From positions 124,001 to 188,000 of the IMG/VR virus record IMGVR_UViG_3300047510_001118: a stretch of DNA of 64,000 bases; one strand, 5' to 3'. The position numbers were made by a program, and so were the translations under genes. The notes beneath the pieces are model-generated. The model ran no database searches. It was not told the origin of the DNA and saw nothing but the letters and a program-made list of their open reading frames with translations. Below are positions 13,622-47,866 of the stretch, piece by piece. The number at the start of each line of letters is the position of its first letter. The first letter of the stretch is position 1.

Positions 13622-13623
13622 GA

Positions 13624-32908: not shown

Positions 32909-33513
32909 TGGAAGTAATTAATGCTTTTCCTGTCGAATTTTTTGTTTTTAAAAATAAAGATATTGACAATCAGGAATTAATTAAAAAATTAGAACGTCTC
33001 GATAATGTTGAGATTAAAAAAACTACTACTCTTAGTATGTTAGTAGATTTACGTAATTTGCCAGAATTTTCTGATTTATTTTCTTGGTTTAAGTCTTGCC
33101 TTGAAGAAGTACGCCAAGGAATGAAGTTTGACTGCGACCGTTTAGAAATATCAAATAGTTGGTTTAATGTCGCCATGGCAGACTATAAAATGTATCAAAA
33201 CTATCATAGGCATTCTATGAGTTTTTACAGCGCAGTATATTATCTAACTGGCGGGTCATCTACAATATTCGAGGATCCTGTTCGAGATCGAAGCCAAGCA
33301 CAGATTGAAGTTCTTAGACATGACTATCAACCAACATTTGCCTCAGAAGCAGAACCGGGAAAATTAATCATCTTTCCTAGTTGGGTATATCACAATAGTC
33401 GCCCGCATCTAGAAAGTTTCAATCGATATGTAATCAGTTTTAATGTTTTTCCTGCGGGTAAAATTAATTATAATCTAGCCACCGATTCTAAACTTGAGGT
33501 TGAAATAAAATGA
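32908..33513 (+). CDS. Fe(II)/2OG oxygenase-like (TIGR02466-type, HxH)
   Basis: NSWFN, HRHSMSFYSAVYYL, FPSWVYH, RYVISFN. TAATG coupling. Confidence 0.85.
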   Translation: MEVINAFPVEFFVFKNKDIDNQELIKKLERLDNVEIKKTTTLSMLVDLRNLPEFSDLFSWFKSCLEEVRQGMKFDCDRLEISNSWFNVAMADYKMYQNYHRHSMSFYSAVYYLTGGSSTIFEDPVRDRSQAQIEVLRHDYQPTFASEAEPGKLIIFPSWVYHNSRPHLESFNRYVISFNVFPAGKINYNLATDSKLEVEIK

Positions 33514-35003
33514 TTAAAAGTCTAGTAGTTCTTGGCAGCGGCACAAGCGGCCTATTAGCAGCCTTGATGATGAAAAAAGCATTTAATGATATGTCTGTAA
33601 AAGTAGTAGCCAGCGAAAGAATAGGAATTATTGGCGTGGGAGAAGGGGCCACAGAACACTGGAAATTTCTCTGTAATTTTCTTGGCATTAACATGAATGA
33701 AGCAGTAGTTCATTGTGGTGCTACTATGAAAGTTGGTATTGTGTTTAAAGATTGGGGTGTTCCAGATTATTATCATTCGGTATTTGATAGTTACGCTTGG
33801 AAAAATGGTGAAACATATCCCTTTTATTCTAAATTAATGGGAGATCGAGTTGACTCCATACAGTTGACCGGTCGAGGATCTAGAGAGCCCATTGTTCCCC
33901 TTGGTTGGGCTACTATGAAAGAAGACCCCGAGGCTAGTCAGTTTCATTTTAATACATTTAAACTAAATGAATATCTTCACAGACTATGTAAAGAAAGAGG
34001 TATTGAAATAATTAACGACGAGATAACAGACGTAGTTATAGAAGACGGTGTAGTAAAAGAATTAATAGGATCACAAAAACATTCTGCTGATTTCTTCATC
34101 GACAGTAGTGGAATGGCTAGGGTTATCATAGGTAAACTTGGTGCCCAATGGAACAGTTACGGAAAACATTTAATCACTAATTCTGCTATAGCATTTCCCA
34201 CTGAAGATACCGACGAGTATCCAATTTATACCACAGCCACTGCTATGAAGCACGGCTGGATGTGGAACACTCCAGTCCAAGGACGATGGGGTAACGGTTA
34301 TGTATTCTGTGACAAGTATATTGACTTTGATCAGGCACAGGCCGAGGTAGAAGAAAAACTAGGTAAAAAAGTTAATATATTTAAAAAAATAAAGTTTGAT
34401 CCAGGGACACTTGATAAAAATTGGATCAGTAATTGTTGTGCTATAGGTCTTAGTTCTGGGTTTGTTGAGCCTTTAGAAAGTTCAGCAATAAGTCAAGGAC
34501 TATTACAAACATGGTTATTAATGAATGTATTTCCGTCTTGGGGGAATTCTAAAAAATCTATTACAGATCTCTATAATAGCAAGTGTCGAGCAATCAGCGA
34601 AAACATTTTAGATTTTATAGCAGTTCACTTTATTACTCCTAGGGAAGATACAGAGTTTTGGAAATATTTAAAATTAAATAGATCTAAGTGGGTTCCTAAG
34701 TCTTTAGAAAAAAATCTAAAGAGTTGGCATAAACGAACACCGCTGTCGTTTGAGTTTGACAGTCAATGGACGTTATTTAAAGCAGAAAATTGGATTTTAA
34801 CTTTGTACGGTTTAGGTCTGTTTGATCTAGATGCTATCAAAGAAGAATACGAACTACACGACCAATCAGTTAAAGATTACGTCAACGGATATTTACAAGA
34901 CGAAATAGATTTTATAAACTCTCGAACTTATGTTTCCCATAAAAAAGGTTTAGAGATGTTTGTTGAAAATTTTAATAAAATAAAAACGGAATATAAATTA
35001 TGA
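33510..35003 (+). CDS. Flavin-dependent halogenase family (PrnA/RebH-like) #1
   Basis: GSGTSG, GVGEG, ATMK (catalytic Lys position), WMWNTP, FVEPLESS. Confidence 0.9.
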   Translation: MIKSLVVLGSGTSGLLAALMMKKAFNDMSVKVVASERIGIIGVGEGATEHWKFLCNFLGINMNEAVVHCGATMKVGIVFKDWGVPDYYHSVFDSYAWKNGETYPFYSKLMGDRVDSIQLTGRGSREPIVPLGWATMKEDPEASQFHFNTFKLNEYLHRLCKERGIEIINDEITDVVIEDGVVKELIGSQKHSADFFIDSSGMARVIIGKLGAQWNSYGKHLITNSAIAFPTEDTDEYPIYTTATAMKHGWMWNTPVQGRWGNGYVFCDKYIDFDQAQAEVEEKLGKKVNIFKKIKFDPGTLDKNWISNCCAIGLSSGFVEPLESSAISQGLLQTWLLMNVFPSWGNSKKSITDLYNSKCRAISENILDFIAVHFITPREDTEFWKYLKLNRSKWVPKSLEKNLKSWHKRTPLSFEFDSQWTLFKAENWILTLYGLGLFDLDAIKEEYELHDQSVKDYVNGYLQDEIDFINSRTYVSHKKGLEMFVENFNKIKTEYKL

Positions 35004-36502
35004 TCGATTCTTTGTGTGTATTAGGTGGAGGAACTAGCGGGCTAATAGTTGCGCTTATGGCTCGAGAAGCCTATCCTAAACTAAAAATAACTATGTTAGA
35101 ATCTAGCAAGTTAGGAATTATTGGTGTTGGCGAAGGATCTACAGAACACTGGAAAAAATTTATCAATCAGATTGGAATAAATGTCCCCGAACTAGTTAGG
35201 GAAACCGGCGCAACATTTAAAATAGGTATTAAGTTTACAAACTGGCATGGAGACGGAACGCACTACTTCCATAGCCTCAGTGAACAGTTCGGCAGTCATT
35301 CTTTTAAAAACGGATTACCATTTACATGGTTTCAAATCGTAGGGGAAAATTGGGATCCGCTAGATACTGCTTGGAAATTATCAATGGACAGCCGTCATAT
35401 TGAACCTCTTCATGATATCCTAAGTCAATATCATTTTGACACATTTAAACTTAACGACTACTTACACAGGCTCTGTAAAATTAGAGGTATTGATATTGTT
35501 GACACTGAGGTCGAGGACGTCATTTTAGATGAACAGGGATTTGTTAAAGAATTAATTGATGTAAACCATACTAGACATGCCTATGATTTTTATGTCGACT
35601 GTAGCGGATTCCGACGTGTCATTGGCAGCAAACTAGGCGCAAAGTGGATTGATTGTACAGATAAACTGCCAATGAATTCGGCTATTGCTTTCCCTACAGG
35701 GTATACCGAAGATATTCCTAGTTATACTGAAGCAACAGCATTAACCAGCGGCTGGTGCTGGAGGATTCCAACACAAGAGAGATACGGAAACGGTTATGTT
35801 TTCTGTGATAATTTTATCAATGAAACACAGGCCTATGATGAAGTTTCAGAATATTATAAACAGTCAAACATCGCAGACAAAATAGAAATAGGAAGAAAAG
35901 TTAAATTTGGAGCAGGTTATGTTGACAAATTCTGGATTAAAAATTGTGCGATGATAGGTCTCAGTGGCATATTTGTAGAACCTCTCGAGGCTTCTAGTAT
36001 CGGCACTACTATACAGCAGACATTTATGCTATTGCCAAGTTTAATGTTCTTTAATCGCGACGAAGAAATAACATCTAACAAGTATAATTTTATGATGAAA
36101 AAAGTTTCCACTAACATCGTAGACTTTATACAACTTCACTATTTTACTCAAAGGTCTGATTCAGAATTTTGGCGTTGGTGTAAAAACGAACTAGTATTAA
36201 CTGATTTTAACAAAGAATACCTAGACTATTTTAAAAAGAATATGCCTAATGTATATTATTTTAATGATCCAATGATTCTGTTTAGTCATTTAAATTTTAC
36301 TCAGGTTATGCATGGTCTAAGATTATTCGACAACGATAAAATATTAAAAACTTATGAAAGTCATCTAAGTCAGTATACACTTGAAACCAATAATATTTTA
36401 AAAGATATTGACGATCAAGTAGCAAATAATGAAATATTTTCTCATCGCCAGGCTTTAGAAATTTTAAAAGAAAGATATGAAAAAACACACTATAAACTCT
36501 AA
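35000..36502 (+). CDS. Flavin-dependent halogenase family #2
   Basis: GGGTSG, GVGEG, ATFK, WCWRIP, FVEPLEAS. Confidence 0.9.
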   Translation: MIDSLCVLGGGTSGLIVALMAREAYPKLKITMLESSKLGIIGVGEGSTEHWKKFINQIGINVPELVRETGATFKIGIKFTNWHGDGTHYFHSLSEQFGSHSFKNGLPFTWFQIVGENWDPLDTAWKLSMDSRHIEPLHDILSQYHFDTFKLNDYLHRLCKIRGIDIVDTEVEDVILDEQGFVKELIDVNHTRHAYDFYVDCSGFRRVIGSKLGAKWIDCTDKLPMNSAIAFPTGYTEDIPSYTEATALTSGWCWRIPTQERYGNGYVFCDNFINETQAYDEVSEYYKQSNIADKIEIGRKVKFGAGYVDKFWIKNCAMIGLSGIFVEPLEASSIGTTIQQTFMLLPSLMFFNRDEEITSNKYNFMMKKVSTNIVDFIQLHYFTQRSDSEFWRWCKNELVLTDFNKEYLDYFKKNMPNVYYFNDPMILFSHLNFTQVMHGLRLFDNDKILKTYESHLSQYTLETNNILKDIDDQVANNEIFSHRQALEILKERYEKTHYKL

Positions 36503-38027
36503 GGCAATAATTTTAGGTGGTGGTACTGCTGGTTGGCTAACAGCAATTTTCATAAAGCGTAACTGGCCCACTGTAGATGTTTCTGTTATAGAAAATCCCA
36601 AACAACCTCCCATAATTGCTGGAGAAAGTGGCACAACAACATTCGTAAGTCTTCTGCGTCATTTAAAAATTGATGTTGAAGATTTTATTAGGAAAGTCAA
36701 TGCTACTCCTAAATTGGGAGGTAAATTTCGTAACTGGGACAGTGTTGGTTCTGAATTTATTCATAGTTTACAGACAGATTATGCTCCGTGGCTAGACGGA
36801 TGGAACGAATACGTTGATGAAAATACTGAAGTTAATTACAGTCTGACAGCAGTTCGAGGAATGTTAGGACATCAAAGTGATCCGTATCTTAAAACTCTCA
36901 TAGGAAATAATGTTCCTATTGCCGATGCGTTATTCGCAACATATTTTATTAAAGAAAATAAAGTTCCTTTTGGGGCGTCTAGTGATATTCCTTGTATTCC
37001 AATGTGGCATTTTGAAAGTCGAGGAGCCGCGGGTTATTTTAAAAATCTCGGGTTAGAGAGAGGTATAAATCTAATCGAAGGCGAATATCAAAGTTCTAAT
37101 TTAGATGACCGAGGAAATATAACATCGCTGGTTCTTGATGGTGATAGACTAGTTCAAGGAGACTGGTTTTTCGATTGTTCGGGATTCGCTAGACTATTAG
37201 TAGGCAAAGTTTACAATGAAAAGTTAGTTGACTATACAAATTACTTTCCAGCAAGAGCGGTAGTAGCATGGTGGGACGATCCTTGTTATTGTGTCACTAC
37301 TAATGCTACAGCAATGAAATATGGTTGGTCTTGGAATATTAATCTTCGCCATAGATCTGGAAACGGTTATATCTATGACCCGGATCATATAACTCTAGAT
37401 CAAGCACTAGACGAAGCCAAAGAAATGTTTGGCCAGCATATCGAACCCATTGCTAATTTTCAATTCACTCCAGGAATGTTTAGAAAGGCATGGCATAAAA
37501 ATACAGTTGCTATCGGACTTAGTTCTGGCTTTCTAGAACCTTTAGAAGCCAACGGCGTAGCAGTAATTATTGAAAGTTTATATGCTTTACAAGATTATTG
37601 GAAACCTTTTGAAAAATCAATGCGGGAAGAAGCGATAGAAAGATTTAATGATCGTGTCTGGTACATAACAGAAGATATTCGAGACTTTTTATCTCTACAT
37701 TATAGAGGTCATAGATCTGACACAAAATTTTGGCTCAGTCATAAAAATGATGATTTTCGAGTGCCCCCAAGTCTAAAAGAAAAACTAGAAAACTGGAAAT
37801 TATTTTTTGCTAATATGGGGTCGGATCCCGAATGTCACGGATATAGCCCTACGGCGTGGCTTATGGTTTTACAGGGATTAAAAATGTTTGATCATAGTCC
37901 GATAGCGGCTAGCATGAAGAACTTTCTTCCTATAGGAAATAGTGTACTAAATAAGAATGTAGCCCGTTATAAGGGACTTGTTGCTCCATTTTGGACCATA
38001 GATGAGTGGATTCAACGGACAGCATAA
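36477..38027 (+). CDS. Flavin-dependent halogenase family #3
   Basis: GGGTAG, IAGES, ATPK, WSWNIN, FLEPLEAN. Confidence 0.88.
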   Translation: MKKHTINSKAIILGGGTAGWLTAIFIKRNWPTVDVSVIENPKQPPIIAGESGTTTFVSLLRHLKIDVEDFIRKVNATPKLGGKFRNWDSVGSEFIHSLQTDYAPWLDGWNEYVDENTEVNYSLTAVRGMLGHQSDPYLKTLIGNNVPIADALFATYFIKENKVPFGASSDIPCIPMWHFESRGAAGYFKNLGLERGINLIEGEYQSSNLDDRGNITSLVLDGDRLVQGDWFFDCSGFARLLVGKVYNEKLVDYTNYFPARAVVAWWDDPCYCVTTNATAMKYGWSWNINLRHRSGNGYIYDPDHITLDQALDEAKEMFGQHIEPIANFQFTPGMFRKAWHKNTVAIGLSSGFLEPLEANGVAVIIESLYALQDYWKPFEKSMREEAIERFNDRVWYITEDIRDFLSLHYRGHRSDTKFWLSHKNDDFRVPPSLKEKLENWKLFFANMGSDPECHGYSPTAWLMVLQGLKMFDHSPIAASMKNFLPIGNSVLNKNVARYKGLVAPFWTIDEWIQRTA

Positions 38028-38052
38028 ATATACTGTTAAAGGAGAATTTACA

Positions 38053-38223
38053 ATGCCTACATATAAGATGATTTTTAGAGATGCAGAAAATCCTAATACA
38101 TCTGACCTACATATCATTGAAGATTTTTGCGAAGCAAAAACTAGAGAAGAAGCACGTCAAATTTTTGAGGATCGCCACGGAGTGAAGTATGTAGTCGCCG
38201 GTCCGATCAAAGTTGAGGAATAA
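38053..38223 (+). CDS. Small hypothetical protein (56 aa)
   Basis: TAAATA at 38025-38030, AAGGAG SD at 38039-38044, ATG 38053. Confidence 0.8.
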   Translation: MPTYKMIFRDAENPNTSDLHIIEDFCEAKTREEARQIFEDRHGVKYVVAGPIKVEE

Positions 38224-38240
38224 TCCTTAATTTTTCTTGT

Positions 38241-38864
38241 CTAGCGTTTGAGTAGATCTCGGACGCTAGATATCTTTTGTAATTCCTGTTTAATAGCATC
38301 ACTAGTCCACTCAAAGGGCAAACCTAGACAAGGCCTAGTATCCCATTTAAGCCAAGCACTGTCTCCATCAGCATCGACATATTGTAAAAATGCCTGTATT
38401 TGTCGCTCGCTGGTTAAGGGGTTGCGCCAGTGTTCGTGTCGTCTACCACTGTAAACTACCATATCACCAACTTCTAAATTAATTTCGTGCTCTGTGCCCT
38501 GTTCATTTTTAATGTATATAGGCCAATCATCGTCTTTTTCTAAACATAAACTAACCGTATACTCACTGCTAGGTCTATCGAAGTGTTTCTGTAATTCAGA
38601 ACCCTTATAGTATATCCTTGCATAAGAATATGTTGGCCATAATCGTTTACCGGTAATTTTTTCAACTTCGGGTTGTACCCAGAGACTTAATGCTTCTATC
38701 ATTAATGGGCTGTAACGAGCAAATGTATTTTCACAGAGATCCGATAACTTTGCTCTGGGATATAGATGTTTACATGCAGTTTCCATCATAGAAAATTCTA
38801 AAGCAATAAACTGACATAGTTCTTTACTTAGAATGTTTTTAGAAATAACATAATCATTATTCAT
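38241..38864 (-). CDS. Fe(II)/2OG oxygenase (HxD)
   Basis: PTYSYARIY, KHFDRPSSEY, L..GD.VVY.G..HEHWR. Confidence 0.85.
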   Translation of the reverse strand: MNNDYVISKNILSKELCQFIALEFSMMETACKHLYPRAKLSDLCENTFARYSPLMIEALSLWVQPEVEKITGKRLWPTYSYARIYYKGSELQKHFDRPSSEYTVSLCLEKDDDWPIYIKNEQGTEHEINLEVGDMVVYSGRRHEHWRNPLTSERQIQAFLQYVDADGDSAWLKWDTRPCLGLPFEWTSDAIKQELQKISSVRDLLKR

Positions 38865-39415
38865 AGTACTGGCACCAATGACATGTCCACAAAGGGACGC
38901 TCAATATAATTTCGAATATAAGGACTCTGCGGTAAAGTATGTATATCAAATCCAATAGTAGTCCTATAACCGTCAAACGGCTCTAATACTTCAACTTTAT
39001 GTTTTCTCGTTCCTGGACCAAGATAAATTTGTCCAGGTTTATTTTCTATTACATAATCCTCAAACACAGTATTTGTTTTTTTTGGATCTAATGATATGTA
39101 GCCGTGATATGCGTAACCATGTTCATGCCAATCTAATACTGTGTCTGGTCTATGATAGTTAATCCACGACTGCATCCAAAGTGGCCGACCCTGTCCTAGG
39201 TGATGTCTTATTAAAGAACATAATTCTTTATATAACCCATAAAAAGCAGTACTAGGAGCAGTTAATACAAAAATATTATACTTGGTATAGTCCCAGGTAG
39301 AATTACCTTCCGGAAATAATCTTTTAAAATTTGTATGTGCTTGTTCTATGTCGTCAAACAGTTGTTTTTGATTGTCAATGATATATTGACTTTGGTATAA
39401 TATATAGTTGTTCAT
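38861..39415 (-). CDS. Fe(II)/2OG oxygenase-like (HxH)
   Basis: QSWIN, WHEH, GPG..KHKV, RTTIGFD. Confidence 0.75.
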   Translation of the reverse strand: MNNYILYQSQYIIDNQKQLFDDIEQAHTNFKRLFPEGNSTWDYTKYNIFVLTAPSTAFYGLYKELCSLIRHHLGQGRPLWMQSWINYHRPDTVLDWHEHGYAYHGYISLDPKKTNTVFEDYVIENKPGQIYLGPGTRKHKVEVLEPFDGYRTTIGFDIHTLPQSPYIRNYIERPFVDMSLVPVL

Positions 39416-40020
39416 AATAATACCTTGCCTAGATTTATATTGATTACCATTCTATATTTTGATTCCTTGGCATATGATGAAGTGTGATAATATTTTCCTG
39501 GAAAAATAAGAATTTTACCTTTCTTAGGTGTAACTATATGTTTTATAGTAAAGTTATTTTCTTTGATAGCCTGTATATCTTTGTTTCCGCTATCGTAGTC
39601 TTCATTTACTTCATTAAAAATTACAGTGTCGCCGTCTGAATCATTGACATAATAGATAGCATTGTAATGAGGGAAATAACTGTCAATATGTGGCATGTGC
39701 CAGTTAAGACTACTGTTAGGATTAGACAATGTAAGATTTGCTCTCATTCTTATTAAACGATTAAATGGTACATTGGCTCGGCTTGTTATACTTAAAACTA
39801 AAGGATACACTAGATCAAAGTACTGACTAGTTTTTTCATTTTGTTCAAAGAAAAAATGATTAAAGCCTGCGTGATTGTCCTTGTTGTTTAAAAAACATTC
39901 ATCTCCGGAAACCATGTTAGGATTGAAGACCCAGGGAAAATTAAAACTAGTCATTAGATCTAGTAGGTGATTTTGATAATCAACAGGAATAATATTTTCT
40001 ATTTCTATAATGTCATTCAT
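39412..40020 (-). CDS. Fe(II)/2OG oxygenase (HxD)
   Basis: RMRANL, PHID, IYYVNDSDGDT, FPGKYYHTS, RMVININ. Confidence 0.85.
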   Translation of the reverse strand: MNDIIEIENIIPVDYQNHLLDLMTSFNFPWVFNPNMVSGDECFLNNKDNHAGFNHFFFEQNEKTSQYFDLVYPLVLSITSRANVPFNRLIRMRANLTLSNPNSSLNWHMPHIDSYFPHYNAIYYVNDSDGDTVIFNEVNEDYDSGNKDIQAIKENNFTIKHIVTPKKGKILIFPGKYYHTSSYAKESKYRMVININLGKVLL

Positions 40021-41244: not shown

Positions 41245-41948
41245 ACTGCCCTCGCAAAAAATACCTGTGTAAGTCTAGCCGTAGTATGTGAATTTCCAAA
41301 GAAGTTTTCGGCACTGTGCCAGTTGCGAGGATCGAAAATAATACATCTATTATAAACGCTTTCCATCGTAACTGAAGGTGTAAAGTGAGAAATTTGTTCT
41401 TTTCTATATTTTTCGTACTGTGCTCGTTCCTCGGGACTGGCTACTAAAACATCATTCATAAAAATTTCTGTGTAAAGATCTCCGTTAAAATCGGTTTGAT
41501 CTTCGTAGATGACAGTGCCACTGCCCAGCGGGCTGTCTTGATTTAAATAGACAACACCTGCGATATTTAATTTAGGATCGTCATCGTGGACCCATCCGCG
41601 TCCATAGGATTCCTCGATAACTTGAAATCCGGTTTGTAGTTCTAAAAATTCTGTATATCCGTAGTCTTTGAGTATTATCAGTAGTTTCCTCATAAACATT
41701 TCAAAGAAATCTCGATTTACAGTATGTAACAAATCAGTTCTAAGTCCGGGCCAACTGCCGCGTTCTCCTTTAAAAAATTTCTGATCCAGAGCAAATTCTC
41801 TAACTAGATCCGGGTCTTCGTAAAAGTTATCAAAGACCATCGTGGGCAAGTATGGATAGACAAAACGATTCTTAATGCCCGATCCTTCGATGAATCTGCC
41901 ACTACTTTTATTCATTTCGATCAGTTTATTAATGTATGCCTTATCCAT
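41241..41948 (-). CDS. Fe(II)/2OG oxygenase (HxD)
   Basis: FDNFYE, WPGLRT, GWVHDD, AGVVYL, YNRC, WHSAE, RLTQVFF. Confidence 0.83.
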   Translation of the reverse strand: MDKAYINKLIEMNKSSGRFIEGSGIKNRFVYPYLPTMVFDNFYEDPDLVREFALDQKFFKGERGSWPGLRTDLLHTVNRDFFEMFMRKLLIILKDYGYTEFLELQTGFQVIEESYGRGWVHDDDPKLNIAGVVYLNQDSPLGSGTVIYEDQTDFNGDLYTEIFMNDVLVASPEERAQYEKYRKEQISHFTPSVTMESVYNRCIIFDPRNWHSAENFFGNSHTTARLTQVFFARAV

Positions 41949-42519
41949 TTTTTCTCGCCGTAAAATTCATTGTTAGGACTATTCTTTTTGTAAACATTTT
42001 AGGACACGAACTTGCGTGATAATGCCAGCCGTTAAACATTAAGATTTTTCCTTGATCGGGTGTACTACGATGCATTACTCTATACTTTTCAGACGGATCG
42101 ATTTCATGGAATATATAGGTATCTCCGTCGGTGCTGTTAACATAGTAACAAACAGTAAAGTGTTCTTGATCATAATCTCGATGAGGAAGATTATGTTTAT
42201 ATGGCATGCTTGGTAGAGCATATTTGGTATTTAATAAAAATCCCAACCGCATTCTTAGCAACGTACCTAACTCATATCCTGTTTTATTCAGCGTTTCATT
42301 TAATAATGGCATGAAAAAATCTAAGTACGGATTAGTTTCATTGTTGGGATGGAACACTAAATGTGTAAATCCTGGTGTAGAATTTTGTATATCGTTGGCT
42401 TTTTCAAACGTAGTATCTTCAACAAAGTGCCAAGGAAATTTAATATCTGTTACTAGGTCATAAATTTTATTTTGATATTCTTTATCTATAACATTTGATA
42501 TTTCTATAGGTTTAAACAT
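41941..42519 (-). CDS. Fe(II)/2OG oxygenase (HxD); paralogue of 39412-40020
   Basis: RMRLG, PHRD, YYVNSTDGDT, FNGWHYHASS, RIVLTMN. Confidence 0.85.
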   Translation of the reverse strand: MFKPIEISNVIDKEYQNKIYDLVTDIKFPWHFVEDTTFEKANDIQNSTPGFTHLVFHPNNETNPYLDFFMPLLNETLNKTGYELGTLLRMRLGFLLNTKYALPSMPYKHNLPHRDYDQEHFTVCYYVNSTDGDTYIFHEIDPSEKYRVMHRSTPDQGKILMFNGWHYHASSCPKMFTKRIVLTMNFTARKNG

Positions 42520-43234
42520 TGTGATTGATCCTATAATAATTTCTATCTACGCTGTTCGTAGGCGACTCTGTGGTAAATCTATTCCAACACGGAATACTCA
42601 TACTTAATCTTTTACTATCTGGATACGCAACGTGAAAACATCTAGCAGGAATATACAGCGCATCGCCTGGTTCTAGTTCTACGTCTAATGCTACTTCTAA
42701 ATCTTCTTCAGAGACTCTGTTATTCATAGTTCCAGTTTTATAAAGATAAGATATTCTATTTTTAAATACCTTCCATCTAGTTTTTCCTTCTACTTGGAAA
42801 ATAAAATTTGCTGGATAATCATCGTGTATTGGAAAACTTTTTGATCCAGTTAATCCGCAGTAAACATGAATAGCGGCATTAACAAAAAATAATTTTTCAA
42901 AAATAGTTAGCAAGTGATTTGTTTTTTCGTTGTAAAAACCATAATTAGTAATTACTAAACAGTTACCTTGATTTACCTTGTCAAAAATAAATTCTTTATC
43001 TTGTACTTTCCTGTTCCATATCCATGCTTTAGTATGCTCTGGTATTTCAATTTTTTGATTTGTTATATGATCTATTAATTCAAATTGAAATAATTCAGGG
43101 CGATTCATACAAGACTCTACATCTTGCCATGTAAGCAATTCATGAGGAGTTTCTAATAAACCTTTAAAAAAATGAGGCTTATCGTTGACTAAGAGATTAG
43201 TTTCATTTAATATACGTTGTCCGATAGCGTTCAT
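42512..43234 (-). CDS. JmjC/cupin oxygenase (YcfD/ROX-like core)
   Basis: SFPIHDD..NFIFQVEGK.RW, LEPGDALYIP...FHVA, RLSMSI. Confidence 0.88.
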   Translation of the reverse strand: MNAIGQRILNETNLLVNDKPHFFKGLLETPHELLTWQDVESCMNRPELFQFELIDHITNQKIEIPEHTKAWIWNRKVQDKEFIFDKVNQGNCLVITNYGFYNEKTNHLLTIFEKLFFVNAAIHVYCGLTGSKSFPIHDDYPANFIFQVEGKTRWKVFKNRISYLYKTGTMNNRVSEEDLEVALDVELEPGDALYIPARCFHVAYPDSKRLSMSIPCWNRFTTESPTNSVDRNYYRINHNV

Positions 43235-43829
43235 CGTCTGTCCTAATTAATTTAACATTAAATGCTAGAGAAATTCGATCCTCGTTAGTTGGATTGTATC
43301 CTACACCATGCGGCAAATGTCCTGGGAACATTAATAACTTACCTGATAAAGGTTCAAAACTTATTGCGCTGGCACTGGCCGGTGTATAATGATCTAAAAC
43401 TGCCTGTGAAGATATAATATAATCTAAAGCATGATTTTTATAAAATGTTATATTTCCTTGCCCGGCAGTTGCTTTGACATAAAATGTTCCTGATAAAAAA
43501 CTATTATCGTGTATATGGATCGAATTTCCGTTATTTTGATTATTGATATTAAACCAAAAATTTTCTAAATCAATAATAACTAAATCTTCTTTGTAGCCGT
43601 AATCTCTTACACATTGCTCTGCTTGTTCTAATATTTTACGTTCTAAAACTTCTAATTCTTTATATGTACCCGGACGAAAATCTTTACTTTGCCATCCGCC
43701 TTCGTTGCTTAGTTTTCTTCCCTGTGGATCTTTTTCTCTTAGAGAATAGCACAGGGATATCAAATCTGTAGGATCGATATCAGTTTGTTCCCACCAAATA
43801 GGAGTTGGAAAATAATATCCTATATTCAT
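43203..43829 (-). CDS. Fe(II)/2OG oxygenase-like (TIGR02466-type, HxH)
   Basis: NEGGWQS, WFNIN, HIHDNSFLSGTFYV, FPGHLPHGV, RISLAFN. Confidence 0.88.
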   Translation of the reverse strand: MNIGYYFPTPIWWEQTDIDPTDLISLCYSLREKDPQGRKLSNEGGWQSKDFRPGTYKELEVLERKILEQAEQCVRDYGYKEDLVIIDLENFWFNINNQNNGNSIHIHDNSFLSGTFYVKATAGQGNITFYKNHALDYIISSQAVLDHYTPASASAISFEPLSGKLLMFPGHLPHGVGYNPTNEDRISLAFNVKLIRTDDERYRTTYIK

Positions 43830-44623
43830 TTTAATATATCTCTCATAGTTGTAGGAGGTAATTCGTGACTAAAAGCAAATGTATGACTCCATCTAAAGTC
43901 TACTGAATCGCAGATGTAGGCCAAATGACATACATTGGCTGGATAAATTGTAAGAGTTTTATATTTGGACGGTGCTGTTCCTATTAGCTCAAATCCCCAT
44001 TCAGACAATTCGCCGTCGGAGATATTAAACCAACTATCGGCTCTTTTAGGAAACTCGCTAAGTTCTCTCCACTTTTTGTGATTTGGATGTGTTTTGTCAA
44101 CTTGAAAATCATATAATTCTCTAAACATCTTTCCGTGATATTGATAAATCTTTGTTCCGCTGTCGTTAAGGTTATGATCAGTAAACCACATATTTGCTAC
44201 CATTCCATAAACATAGTCAATGTGAGGTATTCTCCAACAGGTTATTGGTCGAGAATTTTTCTTGAAATAAACATTTCCCCACTCGTGTATCTGTGGATCA
44301 AATATGTCAGTTCTGATATTTTTTAAATAAAATTCTTTTATTAAGACACAGAGATCTAAACTTACCCACTCGGGTACATGTATTGTATCGAAAGGATTTG
44401 GATCAAAGTTACTAGGATGATTATTATCTTTTTGTATTGGAAATGATGCTATAAGATTTTTGAAAATTTCAAATCCATCATCTACAAACGGATCTTCTGC
44501 TATCCAGTAACCAACATCTTTGGTTAGTTTGACATATTCTGTCTGCCAGGAGTCCAGAGGTTTTAATTTTAAAACCTTGTTAAAATTATTAGCATCAGGA
44601 TAGCATACTTTAAAATCTATCAT
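43826..44623 (-). CDS. Fe(II)/2OG oxygenase-like (HxD)
   Basis: IPHID, NMWF, SGT.IY, YPANVCH, RWS..F. Confidence 0.7.
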   Translation of the reverse strand: MIDFKVCYPDANNFNKVLKLKPLDSWQTEYVKLTKDVGYWIAEDPFVDDGFEIFKNLIASFPIQKDNNHPSNFDPNPFDTIHVPEWVSLDLCVLIKEFYLKNIRTDIFDPQIHEWGNVYFKKNSRPITCWRIPHIDYVYGMVANMWFTDHNLNDSGTKIYQYHGKMFRELYDFQVDKTHPNHKKWRELSEFPKRADSWFNISDGELSEWGFELIGTAPSKYKTLTIYPANVCHLAYICDSVDFRWSHTFAFSHELPPTTMRDILK

Positions 44624-45204
44624 TTTATATTAAATGTGAGAACGATTCTTTCTTGATCGGTTTTATTTGGCTGGACTCTGTGACGCAAAAATCCAGGAAA
44701 TATTAATACGTCATTGGTTTCAGCAGGAACTGCTCTGTAAAGCGATTCTTCTGGTATTATAGGATACATTGTTTTATGATATTCAAGAGGATCTTTAAAT
44801 TCAATATATCCGGCACCCGGCGGAAGTTTTATATAGGCAGCGACAGCAAATGTAACATTGTTGTGATTGTGCTCTAAAGTTTCTCCAGAGTTTCCGTGTC
44901 TATTAAACCACGACTCTGTTACTTCACTCCACCCGTTAGTGAATCCGTATTCTCGACGAATATGTGCGATGCGTTCGCCTAGCCAATTTTGAAAATGTGC
45001 TAGTTCGTCCCAGGTGTGTGGTTGTATTTCCTTGTCAAGCGATACTGTAGATATCGCCTGTCCTTTTTCTAATCGAGAATTTTCTTCAACTTGAGAAAAC
45101 AAATTCTCAATTTTAGGGCCTAAAATGTCATAATTAAATTCGTACCTAAATTTCCAAATGTCTGGAGGAAATACGAACAAACCGCCATTATTAAGATGTA
45201 ACAC
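44620..45204 (-). CDS. Fe(II)/2OG oxygenase-like (TIGR02466-type, HxH)
   Basis: ESWFN, EHNH, FPGFLRHRV, RIVLTFN. GTG start at 45204 with GAGGA SD. Confidence 0.85.
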   Translation of the reverse strand: MLHLNNGGLFVFPPDIWKFRYEFNYDILGPKIENLFSQVEENSRLEKGQAISTVSLDKEIQPHTWDELAHFQNWLGERIAHIRREYGFTNGWSEVTESWFNRHGNSGETLEHNHNNVTFAVAAYIKLPPGAGYIEFKDPLEYHKTMYPIIPEESLYRAVPAETNDVLIFPGFLRHRVQPNKTDQERIVLTFNIK

Positions 45205-45439
45205 CCTGTGTTTCCTCGAACGTCTCAAGTGCTAGAGTAAGACCCATGAGAACACCTTCCATCTTTAAAACATCGACAGATAAATCTTGTCGACGAGTAA
45301 AATCAATAGAAGTAATTCCATATGGATTTAATTTAATGTTAGCAAAATCTTCTTCCATTTTTGATAATTCTTGTTGTGCTTTTTCTTTTTCAGAAGTTAG
45401 ATTAGCCATCGTCTGTTGAATTTTTTCTTTGAAACTCAT
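45191..45439 (-). CDS. Small coiled-coil hypothetical protein (82 aa)
   Basis: Heptad-like helix, AAGGA SD, inside the operon. Confidence 0.8.
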   Translation of the reverse strand: MSFKEKIQQTMANLTSEKEKAQQELSKMEEDFANIKLNPYGITSIDFTRRQDLSVDVLKMEGVLMGLTLALETFEETQGVTS

Positions 45440-45443
45440 AATA

Positions 45444-46232
45444 TCATCCTTTTTTATATCTAGTTAGTACTGCTATAGAACGTTTTAATCTTGAGGCTAA
45501 ACTATCATGATTTAAAATCACACAGTTTGCGGCATAATTAAAGGCTCTTTCCTTTTCTTTATCACGGTCATTGGCGTTTTCTATTTTAACATCATAACTG
45601 GATAAGGACAAGGATTTTCTTGAAACAGGTATTAATTGGCATAGAGGAGTTCCAGCTCGAACTAGAGTTTTGTCATTTAATACATTCCAAAAAAGTTGGA
45701 CATTTAATACGTGTCCGTATTTCATATCAAGGAACCCCGTGGCTGCTGTGAATCTGCTTTCGTTGTTATAGGTTACAGGCAGTTGAAGTAGCATAACATC
45801 ATCACTGGCTTCAACTCGCCACGGGGTTTCTAACTTTATTACAGTTTTTAAAGTTGTATTGGGATCATCTATCAGCGGTTCTACTTGACTACGTGTATGA
45901 CCAGAAACATAGGCATCACGTCCTTCGCTGACTTTATTGAATCGATAAGGTTCTCTCCATTCCATGCTTACACCGTCACCGTTAGTTTGAATGATGAAAT
46001 CGGCAGGTGCTGGCACTACCCAGCCTGTTGAAATAATTTTTCTAATTCCTGGACAATTTTTAGAACTCAAAGTTTCAGGAAGGTCACCGACCTGTTCCTG
46101 TTCCATAAACGGTCTAACTAACCTTGATGATGGAATAATTGGAAAAAGATCTACTACACCAGGCTCTAGACTATAAAATCTGATATAGGGCTCTTCTTTT
46201 TTACCAAATAATCTTTTACAGAGCGTAGTCAT
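45444..46232 (-). CDS. Conserved hypothetical; paralogue of 30846-31676
   Basis: See the shared motif blocks listed for the paralogue. Confidence 0.75.
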   Translation of the reverse strand: MTTLCKRLFGKKEEPYIRFYSLEPGVVDLFPIIPSSRLVRPFMEQEQVGDLPETLSSKNCPGIRKIISTGWVVPAPADFIIQTNGDGVSMEWREPYRFNKVSEGRDAYVSGHTRSQVEPLIDDPNTTLKTVIKLETPWRVEASDDVMLLQLPVTYNNESRFTAATGFLDMKYGHVLNVQLFWNVLNDKTLVRAGTPLCQLIPVSRKSLSLSSYDVKIENANDRDKEKERAFNYAANCVILNHDSLASRLKRSIAVLTRYKKG

Positions 46233-47832
46233 CTTTTCCGCCGTAGATATTATCTTTCAAATATTGATAATGCGTCGGTAGTGTTTTAATATACTCAACA
46301 ACAAAATCTCTATATTCTTCGTATCTACGTTTTGTAAATCCTATTTCTTCTTCTTTAAGTTCGCGTTCGATTCTATCACCGCCGAAGAAAATTAATTCTT
46401 TGGTCGATATTGATTTAACTCCCATGCCGGCTGCAATGAAAATATTTCCAGTATAGTCTTGAAAGTATCTTTGGTTACCGGCTATGTTGCCGACCAAATT
46501 CGGGTACTGTGCTTGATACAACATATAATCACCGTGCATATCAGGACAATATTCGTGTAGTTCAGTACACCAGCGCCAGTAAGGAGTGTCAGTCCTCATC
46601 GACAGAGCATAGTGTTGAGAAACAAAATCTCTAAACTTAGTAACTTCAAAATCTACAGCAAAATTATAGCCTTCAATTTCTGATCTAGTAACAAAGCCCT
46701 GTCTACGGTTAAGAGCATCGACTAGTTTAATAATGTTTTCGTGAGTAGTTAACAGTCCAGTAGACTCTAATGGTTCAACAAATCCATAACTTAGGCCGAC
46801 ACCAACTACATTGGCTAACCATGCTCTTCGACGCTTACCATGTCTAATTTTTACAGGAAACATTTCTGCTTCTTCTGCGATTTTAGGACTGTGTTTTACA
46901 GCCAAATGTGCTCTAAATTCTTTTTGAGCATCCTCGGGTGTTACAAATCTAGTAGAAAATACGTAGCCAGTGCCAATCCTGTTCCAGAGAGGAATATTCC
47001 ATACCCAGCCATTGTCCAAGGCGTGGCAGTCAGTGACATTGTGCATTTCGCGCTCTCTGTCGATGTATGGTAATCTACAGGCCCAAGCCATATCATTGGC
47101 TAGATATTTGTCAAATGGTTTAAATTCAGAACCCATCCAACCTTCTAATAAAATTGATTTGAACCCAGTACAATCGATCCATAGATCCGATTTTAAAATT
47201 CTACCATCATCTAACATGATATCTGTGATATCGCCTCTTGTATTTTTTTTATGCGAATGTACATCGCCTACTATATGTTCAACTCCGTGGGGTAGTGCTA
47301 TTTTTTCTTTGAGATATTTTCCAAAAAGTTGAGCATCAAGATGATATGCTGTATCCCATTTAAATTTATAATTTCTTAGTATACCTTTTTCGTCTTTGGT
47401 TTCTTTATTGTGTTTTGCTAACAGCGTATTTCCTGTAACAAAGAATTCTGCAAAACTTTCTGGCGGATATTCGTCAGGATATAATGTTGATAATTCGCTC
47501 CATGATTGTAGGCCGCCCGGCTTATCAGTATAATCTAACCCAGCACTAAATGGGTATTCAAAAGATTCCCCCTTGCCTTCTCTAAAATTAGTAAAACGAA
47601 TAGAATTTTTATATGTGGCATTACAAGCGGCCATCCAGTCTTCGTCTTTAAGATCTAATAACTGAAGAAATTTATTAATGTGACCTAAGGTGCTTTCACC
47701 AACTCCGACAGTGCCAACTTTGGAAGATTCGACAAGTGTAATCTTTAAATGTGGACACAGTTTAGATAATGCTGCCGCAGTCATCCAACCAGAACTTCCA
47801 CCACCTACTATTGTGACTGTGTTAATCTGCAT
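46216..47832 (-). CDS. Flavin-dependent halogenase family #4
   Basis: GGGSSG, GVGEST, ATYK, YHLDA, WVWNIP, FVEPLESTG. Confidence 0.92.
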   Translation of the reverse strand: MQINTVTIVGGGSSGWMTAAALSKLCPHLKITLVESSKVGTVGVGESTLGHINKFLQLLDLKDEDWMAACNATYKNSIRFTNFREGKGESFEYPFSAGLDYTDKPGGLQSWSELSTLYPDEYPPESFAEFFVTGNTLLAKHNKETKDEKGILRNYKFKWDTAYHLDAQLFGKYLKEKIALPHGVEHIVGDVHSHKKNTRGDITDIMLDDGRILKSDLWIDCTGFKSILLEGWMGSEFKPFDKYLANDMAWACRLPYIDREREMHNVTDCHALDNGWVWNIPLWNRIGTGYVFSTRFVTPEDAQKEFRAHLAVKHSPKIAEEAEMFPVKIRHGKRRRAWLANVVGVGLSYGFVEPLESTGLLTTHENIIKLVDALNRRQGFVTRSEIEGYNFAVDFEVTKFRDFVSQHYALSMRTDTPYWRWCTELHEYCPDMHGDYMLYQAQYPNLVGNIAGNQRYFQDYTGNIFIAAGMGVKSISTKELIFFGGDRIERELKEEEIGFTKRRYEEYRDFVVEYIKTLPTHYQYLKDNIYGGKDDYAL

Positions 47833-47858: not shown

Positions 47859-47866
47859 TATTTATA
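47859..47866 (-). promoter_or_regulatory. T4-type late promoter TATAAATA heading the right arm of the enzyme island
   Basis: Exact TATAAATA just downstream of a terminator and upstream of an AAGGA SD. Confidence 0.65.

What the first reader, a model, noticed from the sequence alone, without database searches (positions are those of the whole stretch)
33510..47832. Four diverged halogenases retain catalytic residues but vary the WxWxIP motif
Seen: all four keep GxGxxG, the Lys at the PrnA-K79-equivalent position (ATMK, ATFK, ATPK, ATYK) and F-x-EPLE. The WxWxIP motif is WMWNTP, WCWRIP, WSWNIN and WVWNIP. Three are tandem and coupled (33510-38027); the fourth is on the opposite arm. Established: Lys and Glu are catalytic in PrnA/RebH, WxWxIP is thought to suppress monooxygenase activity, FADH2 must come from a partner reductase, and a cyanophage halogenase (VirX1) prefers iodide. 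Inference: these are subfunctionalised enzymes with different substrates or halides. #1 and #3 might not be halogenases at all.
Basis: partly seen in the sequence, partly recalled or inferred. Interest (0 to 1): 0.62.

Follow-up and report, generated by a model that had tools for sequence, protein, structure and literature searches.

The report
Four-halogenase island in a marine jumbo phage
A roughly 370-kb uncultured marine phage carries four very different flavin-dependent halogenase genes, each with intact catalytic residues, inside a conserved block of about 14 oxygenase-like genes; they are new members of a known enzyme family whose natural substrates are still unknown.

Summary
Four intact ORFs (33510-35003+, 35000-36502+, 36477-38027+, 46216-47832-) are Trp_halogenase-family proteins (Pfam E 1e-88 to 1e-104).

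H4 is an orthologue of VirX1: 55% identity, the same clade, and the same neighbouring genes as in cyanophage Syn10. H1-H3 are only 28-42% identical to each other. Each belongs to its own deep clade found mainly on viral contigs, with no solved or characterised member.

The odd motifs are not decay:
- WxWxIN is kept in 116 of 121 H3 relatives.
- WMW[NQ]TP is kept in about 46 of 48 H1 relatives.
- Lys, Glu and both Trp are conserved in all clades.
- dN/dS is 0.02-0.27.

The whole island keeps its gene order in 48 viral contigs. The phage backbone is Rak2/PA5oct-like, and no photosynthesis genes were found, so it is not shown to be a cyanophage. No flavin reductase gene is present.

The four are most likely active, non-redundant halogenases with different aromatic substrates, and not canonical free-tryptophan enzymes. 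The idea that #1 and #3 are not halogenases gets no support. Substrates and halide preference remain untested.

The parts
33510..35003 (+). H1, flavin-dependent halogenase, 497 aa, of the WMWNTP clade. It occupies island position 1.
   Evidence: PF04820 E 1.1e-90. Motifs. A clade of about 48 clusters at 48-80% identity nearly all reads WMW[NQ]TP. AF2 pLDDT 94.1 with an FDH fold.
35000..36502 (+). H2, flavin-dependent halogenase, 500 aa, with the canonical WCWRIP motif but EPLEA instead of EPLES.
   Evidence: PF04820 E 5.1e-95. Position-2 orthologues are 58-70% identical in 48 loci. Clade support 99*.
36477..38027 (+). H3, flavin-dependent halogenase, 516 aa, of the WxWNIN clade, with EPLEA and Lys at residue 79.
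   Evidence: PF04820 E 4.7e-88. 116 of 121 clade members end the motif in IN. AF2 pLDDT 90.8; top PDB matches are BrvH, Xcc4156, PrnA and PyrH. The best cellular relative is only 43% identical.
38053..38223 (+). Conserved small ORF of about 56 aa directly after H3; function unknown.
   Evidence: tblastn finds it in 46 of 48 related loci at about 66% identity, from residue 15 of the 73-aa frame onward.
38238..38272 (.). 15-bp-stem hairpin followed by a T-rich tail at the point where the two arms converge; terminator-like.
   Evidence: Pattern scan. It is a single consensus match and its function is not shown.
46216..47832 (-). H4, the VirX1 orthologue, 538 aa, with the canonical WVWNIP motif.
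   Evidence: 6QGM VirX1 E 9.7e-198 over residues 2-532. 54.7% identity to Syn10 and syn9, 63.8% to S-CREM1. Same clade at 100*. Same neighbouring genes as in Syn10.
45444..46232 (-). Gp43-like protein (DUF6065), 262 aa, overlapping the H4 stop by 17 nt. It is a constant neighbour of VirX1-type genes.
   Evidence: 53% identity to the gene after VirX1 in Syn10 and S-CREM1. Atlas feature hits to 'Gp43 family'/DUF6065. No Pfam hit.
38241..45439 (-). Minus-arm array of 11 genes of about 200-265 aa plus one 82-aa ORF. The families are 2OG-Fe(II) oxygenase, DUF6445, JmjC/cupin and the PHROG labelled 'ferrochelatase'.
   Evidence: Pfam and PHROG hits. Largely collinear with the genes after VirX1 in Syn10 and S-CREM1 at 33-63% identity.
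31673..33513 (.). Three further 2OG-Fe(II) oxygenase-type genes at the left edge: 31673-32278 (-), 32279-32908 (+) and 32893-33513 (+).
   Evidence: PF13759/PF13640 and PHROG 81/61 hits. Kept in related loci.
47859..47866 (-). TATAAATA (the T4-type late promoter consensus) 27 nt upstream of the H4 start. A second copy lies at 48435-48442, upstream of the 163-aa gene.
   Evidence: Pattern search. There are only 3 copies in the window against 7.6 expected by chance, so only the position is suggestive.
47938..51045 (-). Genes upstream of H4 on the same strand: a 163-aa gp40-like protein and three paralogous Gly/His-rich proteins of about 285 aa.
   Evidence: 49-61% identity to the genes that precede the halogenases in Syn10 and S-CREM1. 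Sequences. PF21722 Gly_rich_2 was called on analogous genes in L055.
28965..30846 (+). Left anchor in the phage backbone: gp15-like tail sheath stabiliser followed by a NUDIX hydrolase.
   Evidence: PF16724 and PF00293. Best hits are PA5oct-like and Atu_ph07 jumbo phages, which have the same gp15-NUDIX order.

Best explanation
All four genes encode working, non-redundant two-component flavin-dependent halogenases.

Inferred mechanism, by homology with PrnA, RebH and VirX1: FADH2 from a host flavin reductase reacts with O2 and a halide to give hypohalous acid. This is guided to the conserved Lys/Glu pair, about 10 A away, and halogenates an aromatic carbon at a defined position.

H4 is the orthologue of the cyanophage enzyme VirX1 and came with VirX1's whole gene neighbourhood. 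H1, H2 and H3 belong to three other ancient clades found mainly on viral contigs. The changes in WxWxIP (I to T in H1, P to N in H3) and in EPLES (S to A in H2 and H3) are fixed signatures of those clades, not signs of decay or of a switch to oxygenase chemistry.

The four sit in a conserved island of about 16 kb with roughly 14 double-stranded beta-helix (2OG oxygenase, JmjC, cupin) genes. The island is inserted between the gp15-NUDIX unit and the oppositely oriented fibre-like genes of a Rak2/PA5oct-type jumbo phage of about 370 kb.

Each enzyme most likely acts on a different aromatic substrate or site, and none looks like a canonical free-L-tryptophan halogenase. My preferred guess is that the island is a late-expressed oxidative tailoring kit acting on gene-encoded polypeptides, such as virion or fibre proteins or small peptides. 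This guess is weakly held, at about 0.35, and is inference only.

Shown here: family membership, residue conservation, clade structure, synteny and purifying selection. Inferred: activity, reductase source, differences in substrate and halide, and timing of expression.
For: Family and fold:
- PF04820 E 1e-88 to 1e-104.
- All four hit about 30 solved halogenases at E 1e-35 to 1e-198.
- AF2 models of H1 and H3 (pLDDT 94.1 and 90.8) match halogenase structures at TM 0.79-0.87.

Catalytic set:
- In 231 sequences from five clades, 40 columns are at least 90% conserved with the same residue in every clade. These include GxGxxG, G-E, Thr-x-Lys, both Trp of WxW and F-x-E-P-L-E.

Motif variants are fixed:
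- H3 clade: 116 of 121 end in IN.
- H1 clade: about 46 of 48 read WMW[NQ]TP.
- The I/T/S column is one of only 7 columns that are conserved within every clade but differ between clades.

Non-redundancy:
- Pairwise identity is 25-42%.
- There are four starred clades.
- Island order is kept in 48 contigs.
- dN/dS is 0.02-0.27.
- Position 1 holds a different paralogue (WHWRSP) in 43 relatives, while H1-type genes sit in other versions of the island.

VirX1 link:
-.

No reductase:
- No PF01613 hit in the 278-kb record.

Not PrnA-like binders:
- The Tyr pair of Th-Hal (PYYHG) and AbeH (PHYHG) aligns to PECHG in H3 and SQWTL in H1.

Tailoring-kit guess:
- The island holds no scaffold-building, carrier-protein or transporter genes, only JmjC, P4H-type and other DSBH genes.
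- It sits in the structural region next to Gly-rich fibre-like genes in this phage, in Syn10 and S-CREM1, and in L055.
- A T4 late-promoter consensus lies 27 nt upstream of H4.
Against: - No activity, expression or product data exist.
- H1 and H3 do not meet the strict WxWxIP motif. The effect of T254 or N289 on flavin-site shielding is unknown.
- The S-to-A change next to the catalytic Glu in H2 and H3 lies near the halide site and could alter or weaken halide handling.
- The Tyr-pair argument rests on sequence alignment in a poorly conserved region.
- VirX1 itself has only been shown to act on small molecules in vitro (PMC8407142), so a polypeptide substrate has no direct support.
- The Gly-rich neighbours are not true collagen; the longest G-X-Y run is 4.
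- TATAAATA is rarer in the window than chance predicts.
- Deep nodes of the large tree are weakly supported.
Confidence: 0.6

Rival explanations
1. The halogenases and oxygenases tailor a small molecule. This could be a host metabolite or a phage-directed secondary metabolite or capsule decoration, as proposed for large cyanophages. The product would be halogenated indoles, phenols or amino-acid derivatives that act as toxins, signals or protectants during infection. This reading shares the view that the enzymes are active halogenases; it differs only in the class of substrate.
For: VirX1 halogenates many small aromatic compounds in vitro, with I > Br > Cl (PMC8407142). Iyer et al. 2021 predicted a cyanophage cluster that makes a halogenated metabolite derived from an amino acid and a sugar; it combines a halogenase with 2OG and cupin hydroxylases (PMC7824862). 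BrvH-type relatives act on free indole, and H3's best structural match is BrvH.
Against: This island lacks the carbamoyltransferase, methylase and HAD phosphatase genes of that predicted cluster. It also has no scaffold-forming enzyme, carrier protein or exporter. Eighteen tailoring genes with no scaffold gene is odd for a pathway, unless the host supplies the scaffold.
Confidence: 0.3
2. H1 and/or H3 are not halogenases. Altering WxWxIP would open the flavin site, so they would act as flavin monooxygenases or have some other role.
For: H1 has T in place of I and H3 has N in place of P in the motif thought to keep substrate away from the flavin. H3 also reads AGES where the others read GVGE, and EPLEA in place of EPLES.
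Against: Both Trp of the motif, the Lys and the Glu are at least 90% conserved in these clades. A monooxygenase has no need for the Lys/Glu pair. The variants are under purifying selection, not drifting. The models match halogenases rather than monooxygenases at the top of the PDB search. 28 of 125 bacterial homologues also deviate at the last two motif positions. Active halogenases without the motif are known.
Confidence: 0.1
3. The copies are redundant, or are decaying leftovers of duplication or horizontal uptake in a hyperplastic region, with no separate roles.
For: The island lies in a region known to be variable in T4-like marine phages, and its content differs between versions of the island. 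Position 1 has been swapped.
Against: There are no frameshifts or stops in 161 halogenase ORFs from 48 loci. dN/dS is 0.02-0.27. Identity between paralogues is only 25-42%, while orthologues keep 55-80%. The four clades predate the divergence of the contigs.
Confidence: 0.04

Closest known systems
VirX1, the flavin-dependent halogenase of cyanophage Syn10 (PDB 6QGM)
   Same: H4 aligns over residues 2-532 at E 9.7e-198 and 55% identity. It shares the GGGSSG, ATYK, WVWNIP and EPLEST motifs and falls in the same clade at 100*. It has the same neighbours: gp40-like upstream, then gp43-like/DUF6065, a small ORF and the oxygenase array downstream.
   Different: H4 sits in a Rak2/PA5oct-type jumbo phage, not a Kyanoviridae cyanophage. 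The iodide preference and trimeric state of VirX1 are untested for H4. H1-H3 are only 25-28% identical to H4 and lie outside this clade.
BrvH and Xcc4156, 'orphan' bacterial halogenases that act on free indole and have no known natural substrate
   Same: They are the best or near-best sequence and structure matches for H3 (6frl E 2e-55; TM 0.80-0.88). As in these enzymes, the tryptophan-anchoring Tyr pair is absent. Neither they nor H1-H3 sit in a classical biosynthetic gene cluster. Bacterial homologues also often occur as tandem pairs.
   Different: Identity is only 24-27%. BrvH keeps the canonical motif ending IP and keeps EPLES. H1-H3 sit in a separate supergroup of mainly viral sequences.
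PrnA and RebH, the tryptophan 7-halogenases
   Same: Same fold, the same GxGxxG, Lys79, WxW and Glu346 set, and the same two-component dependence on a separate flavin reductase.
   Different: HMMER alignments of H1, H3 and H4 to PrnA and RebH end around PrnA residue 411-435, before the C-terminal tryptophan-binding helices. The Tyr pair is not conserved. There are no pyrrolnitrin or rebeccamycin pathway genes nearby.
The hyperplastic halogenase plus 2OG-Fe(II) oxygenase cluster of T4-like marine phages (Syn9/Syn10, S-CREM1, HTVC008M)
   Same: The window's minus arm is largely collinear with it. HTVC008M also places a halogenase and oxygenases next to gp15, gp16 and gp17. The literature already notes one or two prnA copies and multi-copy oxygenases in these phages (PMC3037559; PMC9964418).
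   Different: Here the cluster is larger, with four halogenases and about 14 oxygenase-like genes. It has a second, convergent arm (H1-H3) that the checked isolates lack. It is carried by a different phage family.
Predicted cyanophage gene cluster for a halogenated metabolite (Iyer et al. 2021; S-SSM6a and P-SSM2 type)
   Same: It combines an amino-acid halogenase with 2OG and cupin hydroxylases in a large marine phage.
   Different: No carbamoyltransferase, HemK-like methylase or HAD phosphatase gene was found in this island.
Peptide-acting flavin-dependent halogenases such as MibH and SrpI (recalled from memory, not checked here)
   Same: They are precedent that this enzyme class can halogenate Trp within ribosomal peptides. 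That is the chemistry needed for the tailoring-kit guess.
   Different: No sequence comparison was made here. No recognisable precursor-peptide or RiPP genes were identified. The conserved 56-aa and 82-aa ORFs are untested candidates only.

Membership tests
Flavin-dependent halogenase, tryptophan-halogenase family (PF04820) | Full-length match to the family profile above the curated cut-off | tested here: met
   All four score 296-349 bits against a 21-bit cut-off and cover profile positions 2-3 to 443-452 of 458.
Flavin-dependent halogenase, tryptophan-halogenase family (PF04820) | N-terminal GxGxxG dinucleotide-binding motif | tested here: met
   GSGTSG, GGGTSG, GGGTAG and GGGSSG. The three Gly are invariant across clades.
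Flavin-dependent halogenase, tryptophan-halogenase family (PF04820) | Catalytic Lys (PrnA K79) and catalytic Glu (PrnA E346, within F-x-E-P-L-E) | tested here: met
   K74, K74, K79 and K75, with the EPLE Glu present in all four. They align to the same columns in VirX1, BrvH, Th-Hal, Thal, AbeH and SttH. They are at least 90% conserved in all five clades.
Flavin-dependent halogenase, tryptophan-halogenase family (PF04820) | Strict WxWxIP motif | tested here: not met
   Met by H2 (WCWRIP) and H4 (WVWNIP). Not met by H1 (WMWNTP) or H3 (WSWNIN). Both Trp are kept in all four. The motif is not universal: 28 of 125 bacterial homologues deviate at the last two positions, and a review notes active halogenases that lack it. 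This failure therefore weakens the membership claim only slightly.
Flavin-dependent halogenase, tryptophan-halogenase family (PF04820) | Two-domain fold: FAD-binding box plus C-terminal helical substrate module | tested here: met
   Tested for H1 and H3 only. AF2 pLDDT is 94.1 and 90.8. The top Foldseek matches are all halogenases at TM 0.79-0.87, aligned over about 510-560 columns.
Flavin-dependent halogenase, tryptophan-halogenase family (PF04820) | Halide-, O2- and FADH2-dependent halogenating activity | not testable with these tools
   This needs an enzyme assay.
VirX1-type viral halogenase (tested for H4 only) | Orthology to Syn10 VirX1, shown by sequence, clade and conserved neighbours | tested here: met
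   E 9.7e-198 and 55% identity. Clade support 100*. The upstream and downstream genes match those of Syn10 and S-CREM1 at 33-64% identity.
VirX1-type viral halogenase (tested for H4 only) | Preference for iodide and a wide, open active site | not testable with these tools
   No sequence determinant of halide preference is established, and H4 was not modelled.
Free-L-tryptophan halogenases (PrnA, RebH, Thal type) | C-terminal residues that anchor the amino-acid part of tryptophan (a Tyr-Tyr pair and a nearby Glu/Phe) | tested here: inconclusive
   The Tyr pair of Th-Hal and AbeH aligns to EC in H3 and QW in H1. Local alignments of H1, H3 and H4 to PrnA and RebH stop before this region. This rests on sequence alignment in a divergent region, with no structure superposition at residue level.
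Carrier-protein-dependent ('variant B') halogenases | A neighbouring acyl or peptidyl carrier protein, or NRPS/PKS genes | tested here: not met
   Pfam and PHROG scans of the ORFs of 140 aa or more between 27325 and 48429 show none.

The most novel reading that the evidence does not exclude
The island may be a kit for modifying proteins after translation. Under this reading, the four halogenases each put Cl, Br or I on particular Trp, Tyr or His residues of virion or fibre proteins, or of the small conserved peptides encoded beside them. The roughly 14 JmjC, P4H-like and cupin oxygenases would hydroxylate the same targets. That would give the first halogenated virus particle and a new biological role for flavin-dependent halogenases. 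The swap of the position-1 enzyme between related phages would then reflect diversification of the particle surface.
Probability: 0.2. Interest if true: 0.85.

Novelty: new member of a known kind. Interest (0 to 1): 0.5.

Why it matters
VirX1 is the only viral halogenase that has been characterised, and it attracted attention for iodinating many substrates. This locus shows that VirX1 represents just one of at least four or five old halogenase lineages carried by marine phages. The other three here (H1-H3) belong to a group found mainly on viral contigs. That group has no solved structure, no assayed member and clade-fixed changes at motif positions usually treated as diagnostic.

These enzymes are ready-made candidates for new selectivities in biocatalysis. 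They also offer a natural experiment on what the I and P of WxWxIP and the Ser of EPLES actually do.

Biologically, a block of 18 tailoring enzymes is conserved across 48 viral contigs, and its minus arm is shared with T4-like cyanophages of another family. That poses a clear, testable question about what phages halogenate and hydroxylate during infection.

Tried and rejected
- Megablast of the tandem genes and of window 1-20000 against 50,697 phage records gave no match. No close isolate exists in that collection, or it is withheld.
- A flavin reductase (PF01613) search in the own record found nothing.
- psbA/psbD (PF00124) and hli (PF00504) were absent from the own record. psbA was also absent from five related records. 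Absence from fragments is not proof.
- The window contains no tRNA genes.
- The sigma-70 promoter and terminator scans were at chance level (76 vs 71.7; 10 vs 10.5). Only the convergence hairpin is worth noting.
- TATAAATA is not enriched.
- I looked for oxygenase paralogues with an HxA/HxG triad, as in 2OG-dependent halogenases. No consistent case was found. The PF13759-type copies show HxH...H instead.
- The 'collagen-like' label on the neighbouring genes was rejected. The longest G-X-Y run is 4, so they are Gly/His-rich rather than collagen.
- The gp43-like neighbour is not a reductase. It matches only DUF6065.
- The VirX1 primary paper is not held.
- A tree containing PrnA, RebH and BrvH themselves could not be built, because PDB sequences have no reference handle here and I did not type them. 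Instead I used HMMER and Foldseek scores against the PDB plus 125 bacterial homologues from genome contigs.
- The large representative-protein search was left unused.
- A single-protein scan of 185,579 species' genomes found no H3 relative. The profile scan's best hit was 43% identical, on a 20-kb MAG contig.

Full report
**1. Observation.**
The window holds four uninterrupted ORFs at the stated coordinates: H1 33510-35003 (+), H2 35000-36502 (+), H3 36477-38027 (+) and H4 46216-47832 (-).

All four match Pfam PF04820 (Trp_halogenase) almost end to end, at E 1e-88 to 1e-104.
- a GxGxxG in each;
- ATMK, ATFK, ATPK and ATYK;
- WMWNTP, WCWRIP, WSWNIN and WVWNIP;
- F-x-EPLE in each.

HMMER alignments to solved halogenases put the Lys, the WxW and the EPLE Glu in the same columns as in VirX1, BrvH, Th-Hal, Thal, AbeH and SttH.

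H1/H2 overlap by 4 nt and H2/H3 by 26 nt. The oxygenase gene before H1 also overlaps it by 4 nt, so 'tandem and coupled' is right. These are the only four PF04820 matches in the whole 278,126-bp viral record.

**2. What the four proteins are.**
H4 is an orthologue of VirX1:
- E 9.7e-198 against PDB 6QGM over residues 2-532;
- 54.7% identity to Syn10 and syn9, and 63.8% to S-CREM1;
- the same clade with 100% SH-aLRT support.

H1-H3 are far from anything solved or cultured. Their best PDB hits are E 1e-52 to 1e-56 at about 24-27% identity, spread over BrvH, AbeH, PrnA, Thal and two Pseudoalteromonas enzymes. Their best isolate-phage hits are 31-40% identical.

Among themselves, H1-H2 are 42% identical, H1/H2-H3 are 28-30%, and H4 against the rest is 25-28%.

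AlphaFold models built on deep alignments are confident: H1 pLDDT 94.1 and H3 90.8. The listed PDB matches for both are all flavin-dependent halogenases at TM 0.75-0.88 over the full length.

**3. The motif variants are fixed, not decay.**
A word-index search found at least 120 clusters related to H3 at 45-75% identity. Of 121 sequences, 116 end the motif in IN, and ATPK and F-x-EPLE are kept.

H1 has about 48 relatives at 48-80% identity, and about 46 of them read WMW[NQ]TP.

An alignment of 231 sequences from five clades has 40 columns that are at least 90% conserved with the same residue in every clade. These include:
- GxGxxG;
- the G-E of the second FAD motif;
- Thr-x-Lys;
- both Trp;
- F, E, P, L and E of the Glu motif.

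The I/T/S position of WxWxIP is one of only seven columns that are conserved within each clade but differ between clades.

For background, 125 bacterial homologues taken from 80 genome loci end the motif in IP 97 times, IG 18 times and something else 10 times. They read EPLEA 23 times. A review also notes that active halogenases lacking WxWxIP exist (PMC8407142).

A flavin monooxygenase would have no reason to keep the Lys/Glu pair.

**4. The island and its conservation.**
Between the halogenase arms lie 11 co-directional genes of about 200-265 aa. They belong to the 2OG-Fe(II) oxygenase, DUF6445 and JmjC/cupin families, plus one member of a PHROG labelled 'ferrochelatase'. Three more oxygenase genes lie left of H1.

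A scan of IMG/VR returned 48 loci with an H3 relative. All of them keep the same order at about 50-79% amino-acid identity: two oxygenases, three halogenases, then the convergent oxygenase array ending in the gp43-like gene and the VirX1-type gene. None of the 161 halogenase ORFs is broken.

NG86 dN/dS between syntenic loci is 0.02-0.27 for all four positions. For the least saturated pair it is 0.11-0.24.

Position 1 is special. In 43 relatives it holds a different paralogue (WHWRSP or WMWRAP, ATIK, GGGNAG) that is 37-40% identical to H1 and 48% to H2. H1-type genes occur in other versions of the island, which contain three or four tandem halogenases interleaved with oxygenases, always after gp15-NUDIX. 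The lineage therefore carries at least five halogenase types, and it swaps one while keeping the others.

**5. Phylogeny.**
In an 86-row IQ-TREE (quick search, SH-aLRT), the four window enzymes fall in four separately supported clades:
- the VirX1 clade (100);
- the WxWNIN clade (100, on a long stem);
- an H2 clade that also holds the position-1 WHWRSP paralogues (98);
- the WMWNTP clade (100), sister to the P-SSM2/S-H38 cyanophage type.

I then added 125 bacterial sequences and ran FastTree with a midpoint root. H1-H3, HTVC008M and an S-RIM44 copy sit in a group of 78 tips. Of these, 72 come from viral contigs or from unlabelled metagenome contigs related to H1 and H3, and 6 come from bacterial MAG contigs. 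The VirX1 clade sits among bacterial enzymes. Deep nodes are weak (58-93), so this is a lead and not a result.

In 185,579 species' genomes, the closest relative of H3 is 43% identical, on a 20-kb contig of a Crocinitomicaceae MAG that also carries a second halogenase. The next relatives are 33% identical or less.

PrnA, RebH and BrvH themselves could not be placed in the tree, because no reference handle to their sequences was available. Scores against the PDB stand in for them.

**6. Which phage.**
The record is not shown to be a cyanophage.
- Its major capsid protein (395 aa) is 65-71% identical to Rak2/PA5oct-type jumbo phages: Vibrio phage 2.275.O, Sinorhizobium Phosso, GAP32, CBB and PA5oct. 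Cyanophages score below 60%.
- The gp15-like gene that borders the island also hits PA5oct-like phages and Atu_ph07 best, and those have the same gp15-NUDIX order.
- In PA5oct, the NUDIX gene is followed by one small gene and then an oppositely oriented tail-fibre gene. Here about 16 kb of island sits at that convergence point.
- CheckV estimates for this record and five relatives imply genomes of about 370 kb. The exact H1 protein also occurs on a 381,653-bp contig.
- No psbA, psbD or hli gene was found.
- No Rak2-like isolate has a halogenase hit.

By contrast, the minus arm is largely collinear with the VirX1 neighbourhood of cyanophages Syn10 and S-CREM1, at 33-64% identity. It runs from the Gly/His-rich genes through the 163-aa gene, H4, the gp43-like gene (DUF6065), an 82-aa ORF and the oxygenase array. 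The island is thus a module shared between phage families. HTVC008M, a Pelagibacter myovirus, also keeps a halogenase with oxygenases beside gp15, gp16 and gp17.

**7. How it most likely works.**
By homology with PrnA, RebH and VirX1 (established family knowledge), each enzyme should bind FADH2 made by a separate reductase, form hypohalous acid, and use the Lys/Glu pair to halogenate an aromatic carbon.

No reductase gene is present in the record, so the host would have to supply FADH2, which VirX1, as a two-component enzyme, also needs.

The residues that anchor free tryptophan in Th-Hal and AbeH do not align to like residues in H3 or H1. Alignments of H1, H3 and H4 to PrnA and RebH end before that region. 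The enzymes therefore look more like BrvH or VirX1 than like tryptophan halogenases.

What they halogenate is unknown. The island contains no scaffold-building, carrier or export genes, only tailoring-type enzymes that include JmjC and P4H-like families. It lies in the structural region beside Gly-rich fibre-like genes in three phage lineages. A T4 late-promoter consensus sits 27 nt before H4, although the motif is not enriched overall.

I therefore lean, weakly (about 0.35), toward gene-encoded polypeptides as the targets. The small-molecule reading is about as likely (about 0.3). It is supported by VirX1's in vitro scope and by the metabolite cluster that Iyer et al. predicted in large cyanophages.

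**8. Novelty and verdict.**
Phage 'tryptophan halogenases' and multi-copy 2OG oxygenases are long known. One or two prnA copies were reported in 6 of 16 cyanomyoviruses (PMC3037559), ten oxygenases in S-CREM1, and up to three halogenase places in S-RIM44. The enzymes here are clear family members.

What is new is a matter of degree and context:
- four halogenases in one conserved island;
- three of them from uncharacterised clades found mainly on viral contigs, with fixed motif variants;
- a jumbo-phage backbone that shares the VirX1 module with cyanophages.

I rate this as new members of a known kind, of moderate interest. The main value is as a source of untested halogenase diversity and as a defined question about the natural substrates of phage halogenases.

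**Limits.**
- Only H1 and H3 were modelled.
- The deep phylogeny is weak.
- Host identity is unknown.

Noticed in passing
G000:C1 about 205.1-206.3 kb (locus L053:1432-2619, - strand); window 28965-30846: The phage backbone is of the Rak2/PA5oct jumbo type. The capsid protein is 65-71% identical to Vibrio phage 2.275.O, Phosso, GAP32 and CBB. The gp15-NUDIX order matches PA5oct. Genome size is estimated at about 370 kb. No psbA, psbD or hli gene was found. The host is unknown and the phage is not shown to be a cyanophage.
   Followed up: partly
window 38053-38223 (+): A conserved ORF of about 56 aa lies directly after H3. It is kept in 46 of 48 related loci at about 66% identity. It has no known family and could be a partner or a substrate peptide.
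   Followed up: partly
window 45191-45439 (-) and 45444-46232 (-): An 82-aa ORF (Syn10 gp44-like) and a 262-aa DUF6065/'Gp43 family' gene always follow the VirX1-type gene. The latter overlaps its stop codon. Their functions are unknown, and neither is a flavin reductase.
   Followed up: partly
window 31673-33513, 38861-40636, 41941-42519, 43203-45228: In an alignment of nine oxygenase paralogues from these stretches, six show an H-x-H ... H pattern where the usual 2OG oxygenase triad is H-x-D/E ... H. Those six include all five strong PF13759-type matches. Only the distal His is invariant across the nine aligned copies.
   Followed up: partly
window 48453-51045 (-) and 52242-61919 (-): Three paralogous Gly/His-rich proteins of about 285 aa share an N-terminal MPFDY start and an HPQGGHF...HQGHSAPGTGG tail. 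Downstream lies a 3225-aa ORF. These are probably fibre or surface proteins. They share 57-61% identity with genes that precede the halogenases in Syn10 and S-CREM1.
   Followed up: partly
loci L005-L052, position 1 of the island; L054 and L055: The first halogenase slot is swapped between relatives: WHWRSP type in 43 loci, WMWNTP type here. Other versions of the island have three or four tandem halogenases interleaved with oxygenases.
   Followed up: yes
L062 (Crocinitomicaceae MAG contig JBDNIA010000038.1, 20 kb): This contig carries an H3-like gene (WSWRIN, 43% identity) next to a second halogenase (WIWKIG). It may be a phage contig binned with a Bacteroidota genome, which would be a possible hint to the host.
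   Followed up: no
loci L062-L141 (bacterial genome contigs): Eighty bacterial loci yielded 125 halogenase ORFs, so tandem pairs of diverged halogenases are common in marine Gammaproteobacteria and Alphaproteobacteria. Their motif ends in IG in 18 cases.
   Followed up: partly
L056:6488-8011 (Syn10 CPUG_00132): Syn10 has a second halogenase just upstream of VirX1. It is 37% identical to H4 and its motif is WVWNVP, so motif variation next to VirX1 already exists in a cultured phage.
   Followed up: no
window 31673-47832: The island's GC content is 0.353, against 0.394 for the whole record and 0.43-0.47 for the adjacent structural genes. This is lower, but within the record's range of 0.33-0.48.
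   Followed up: yes
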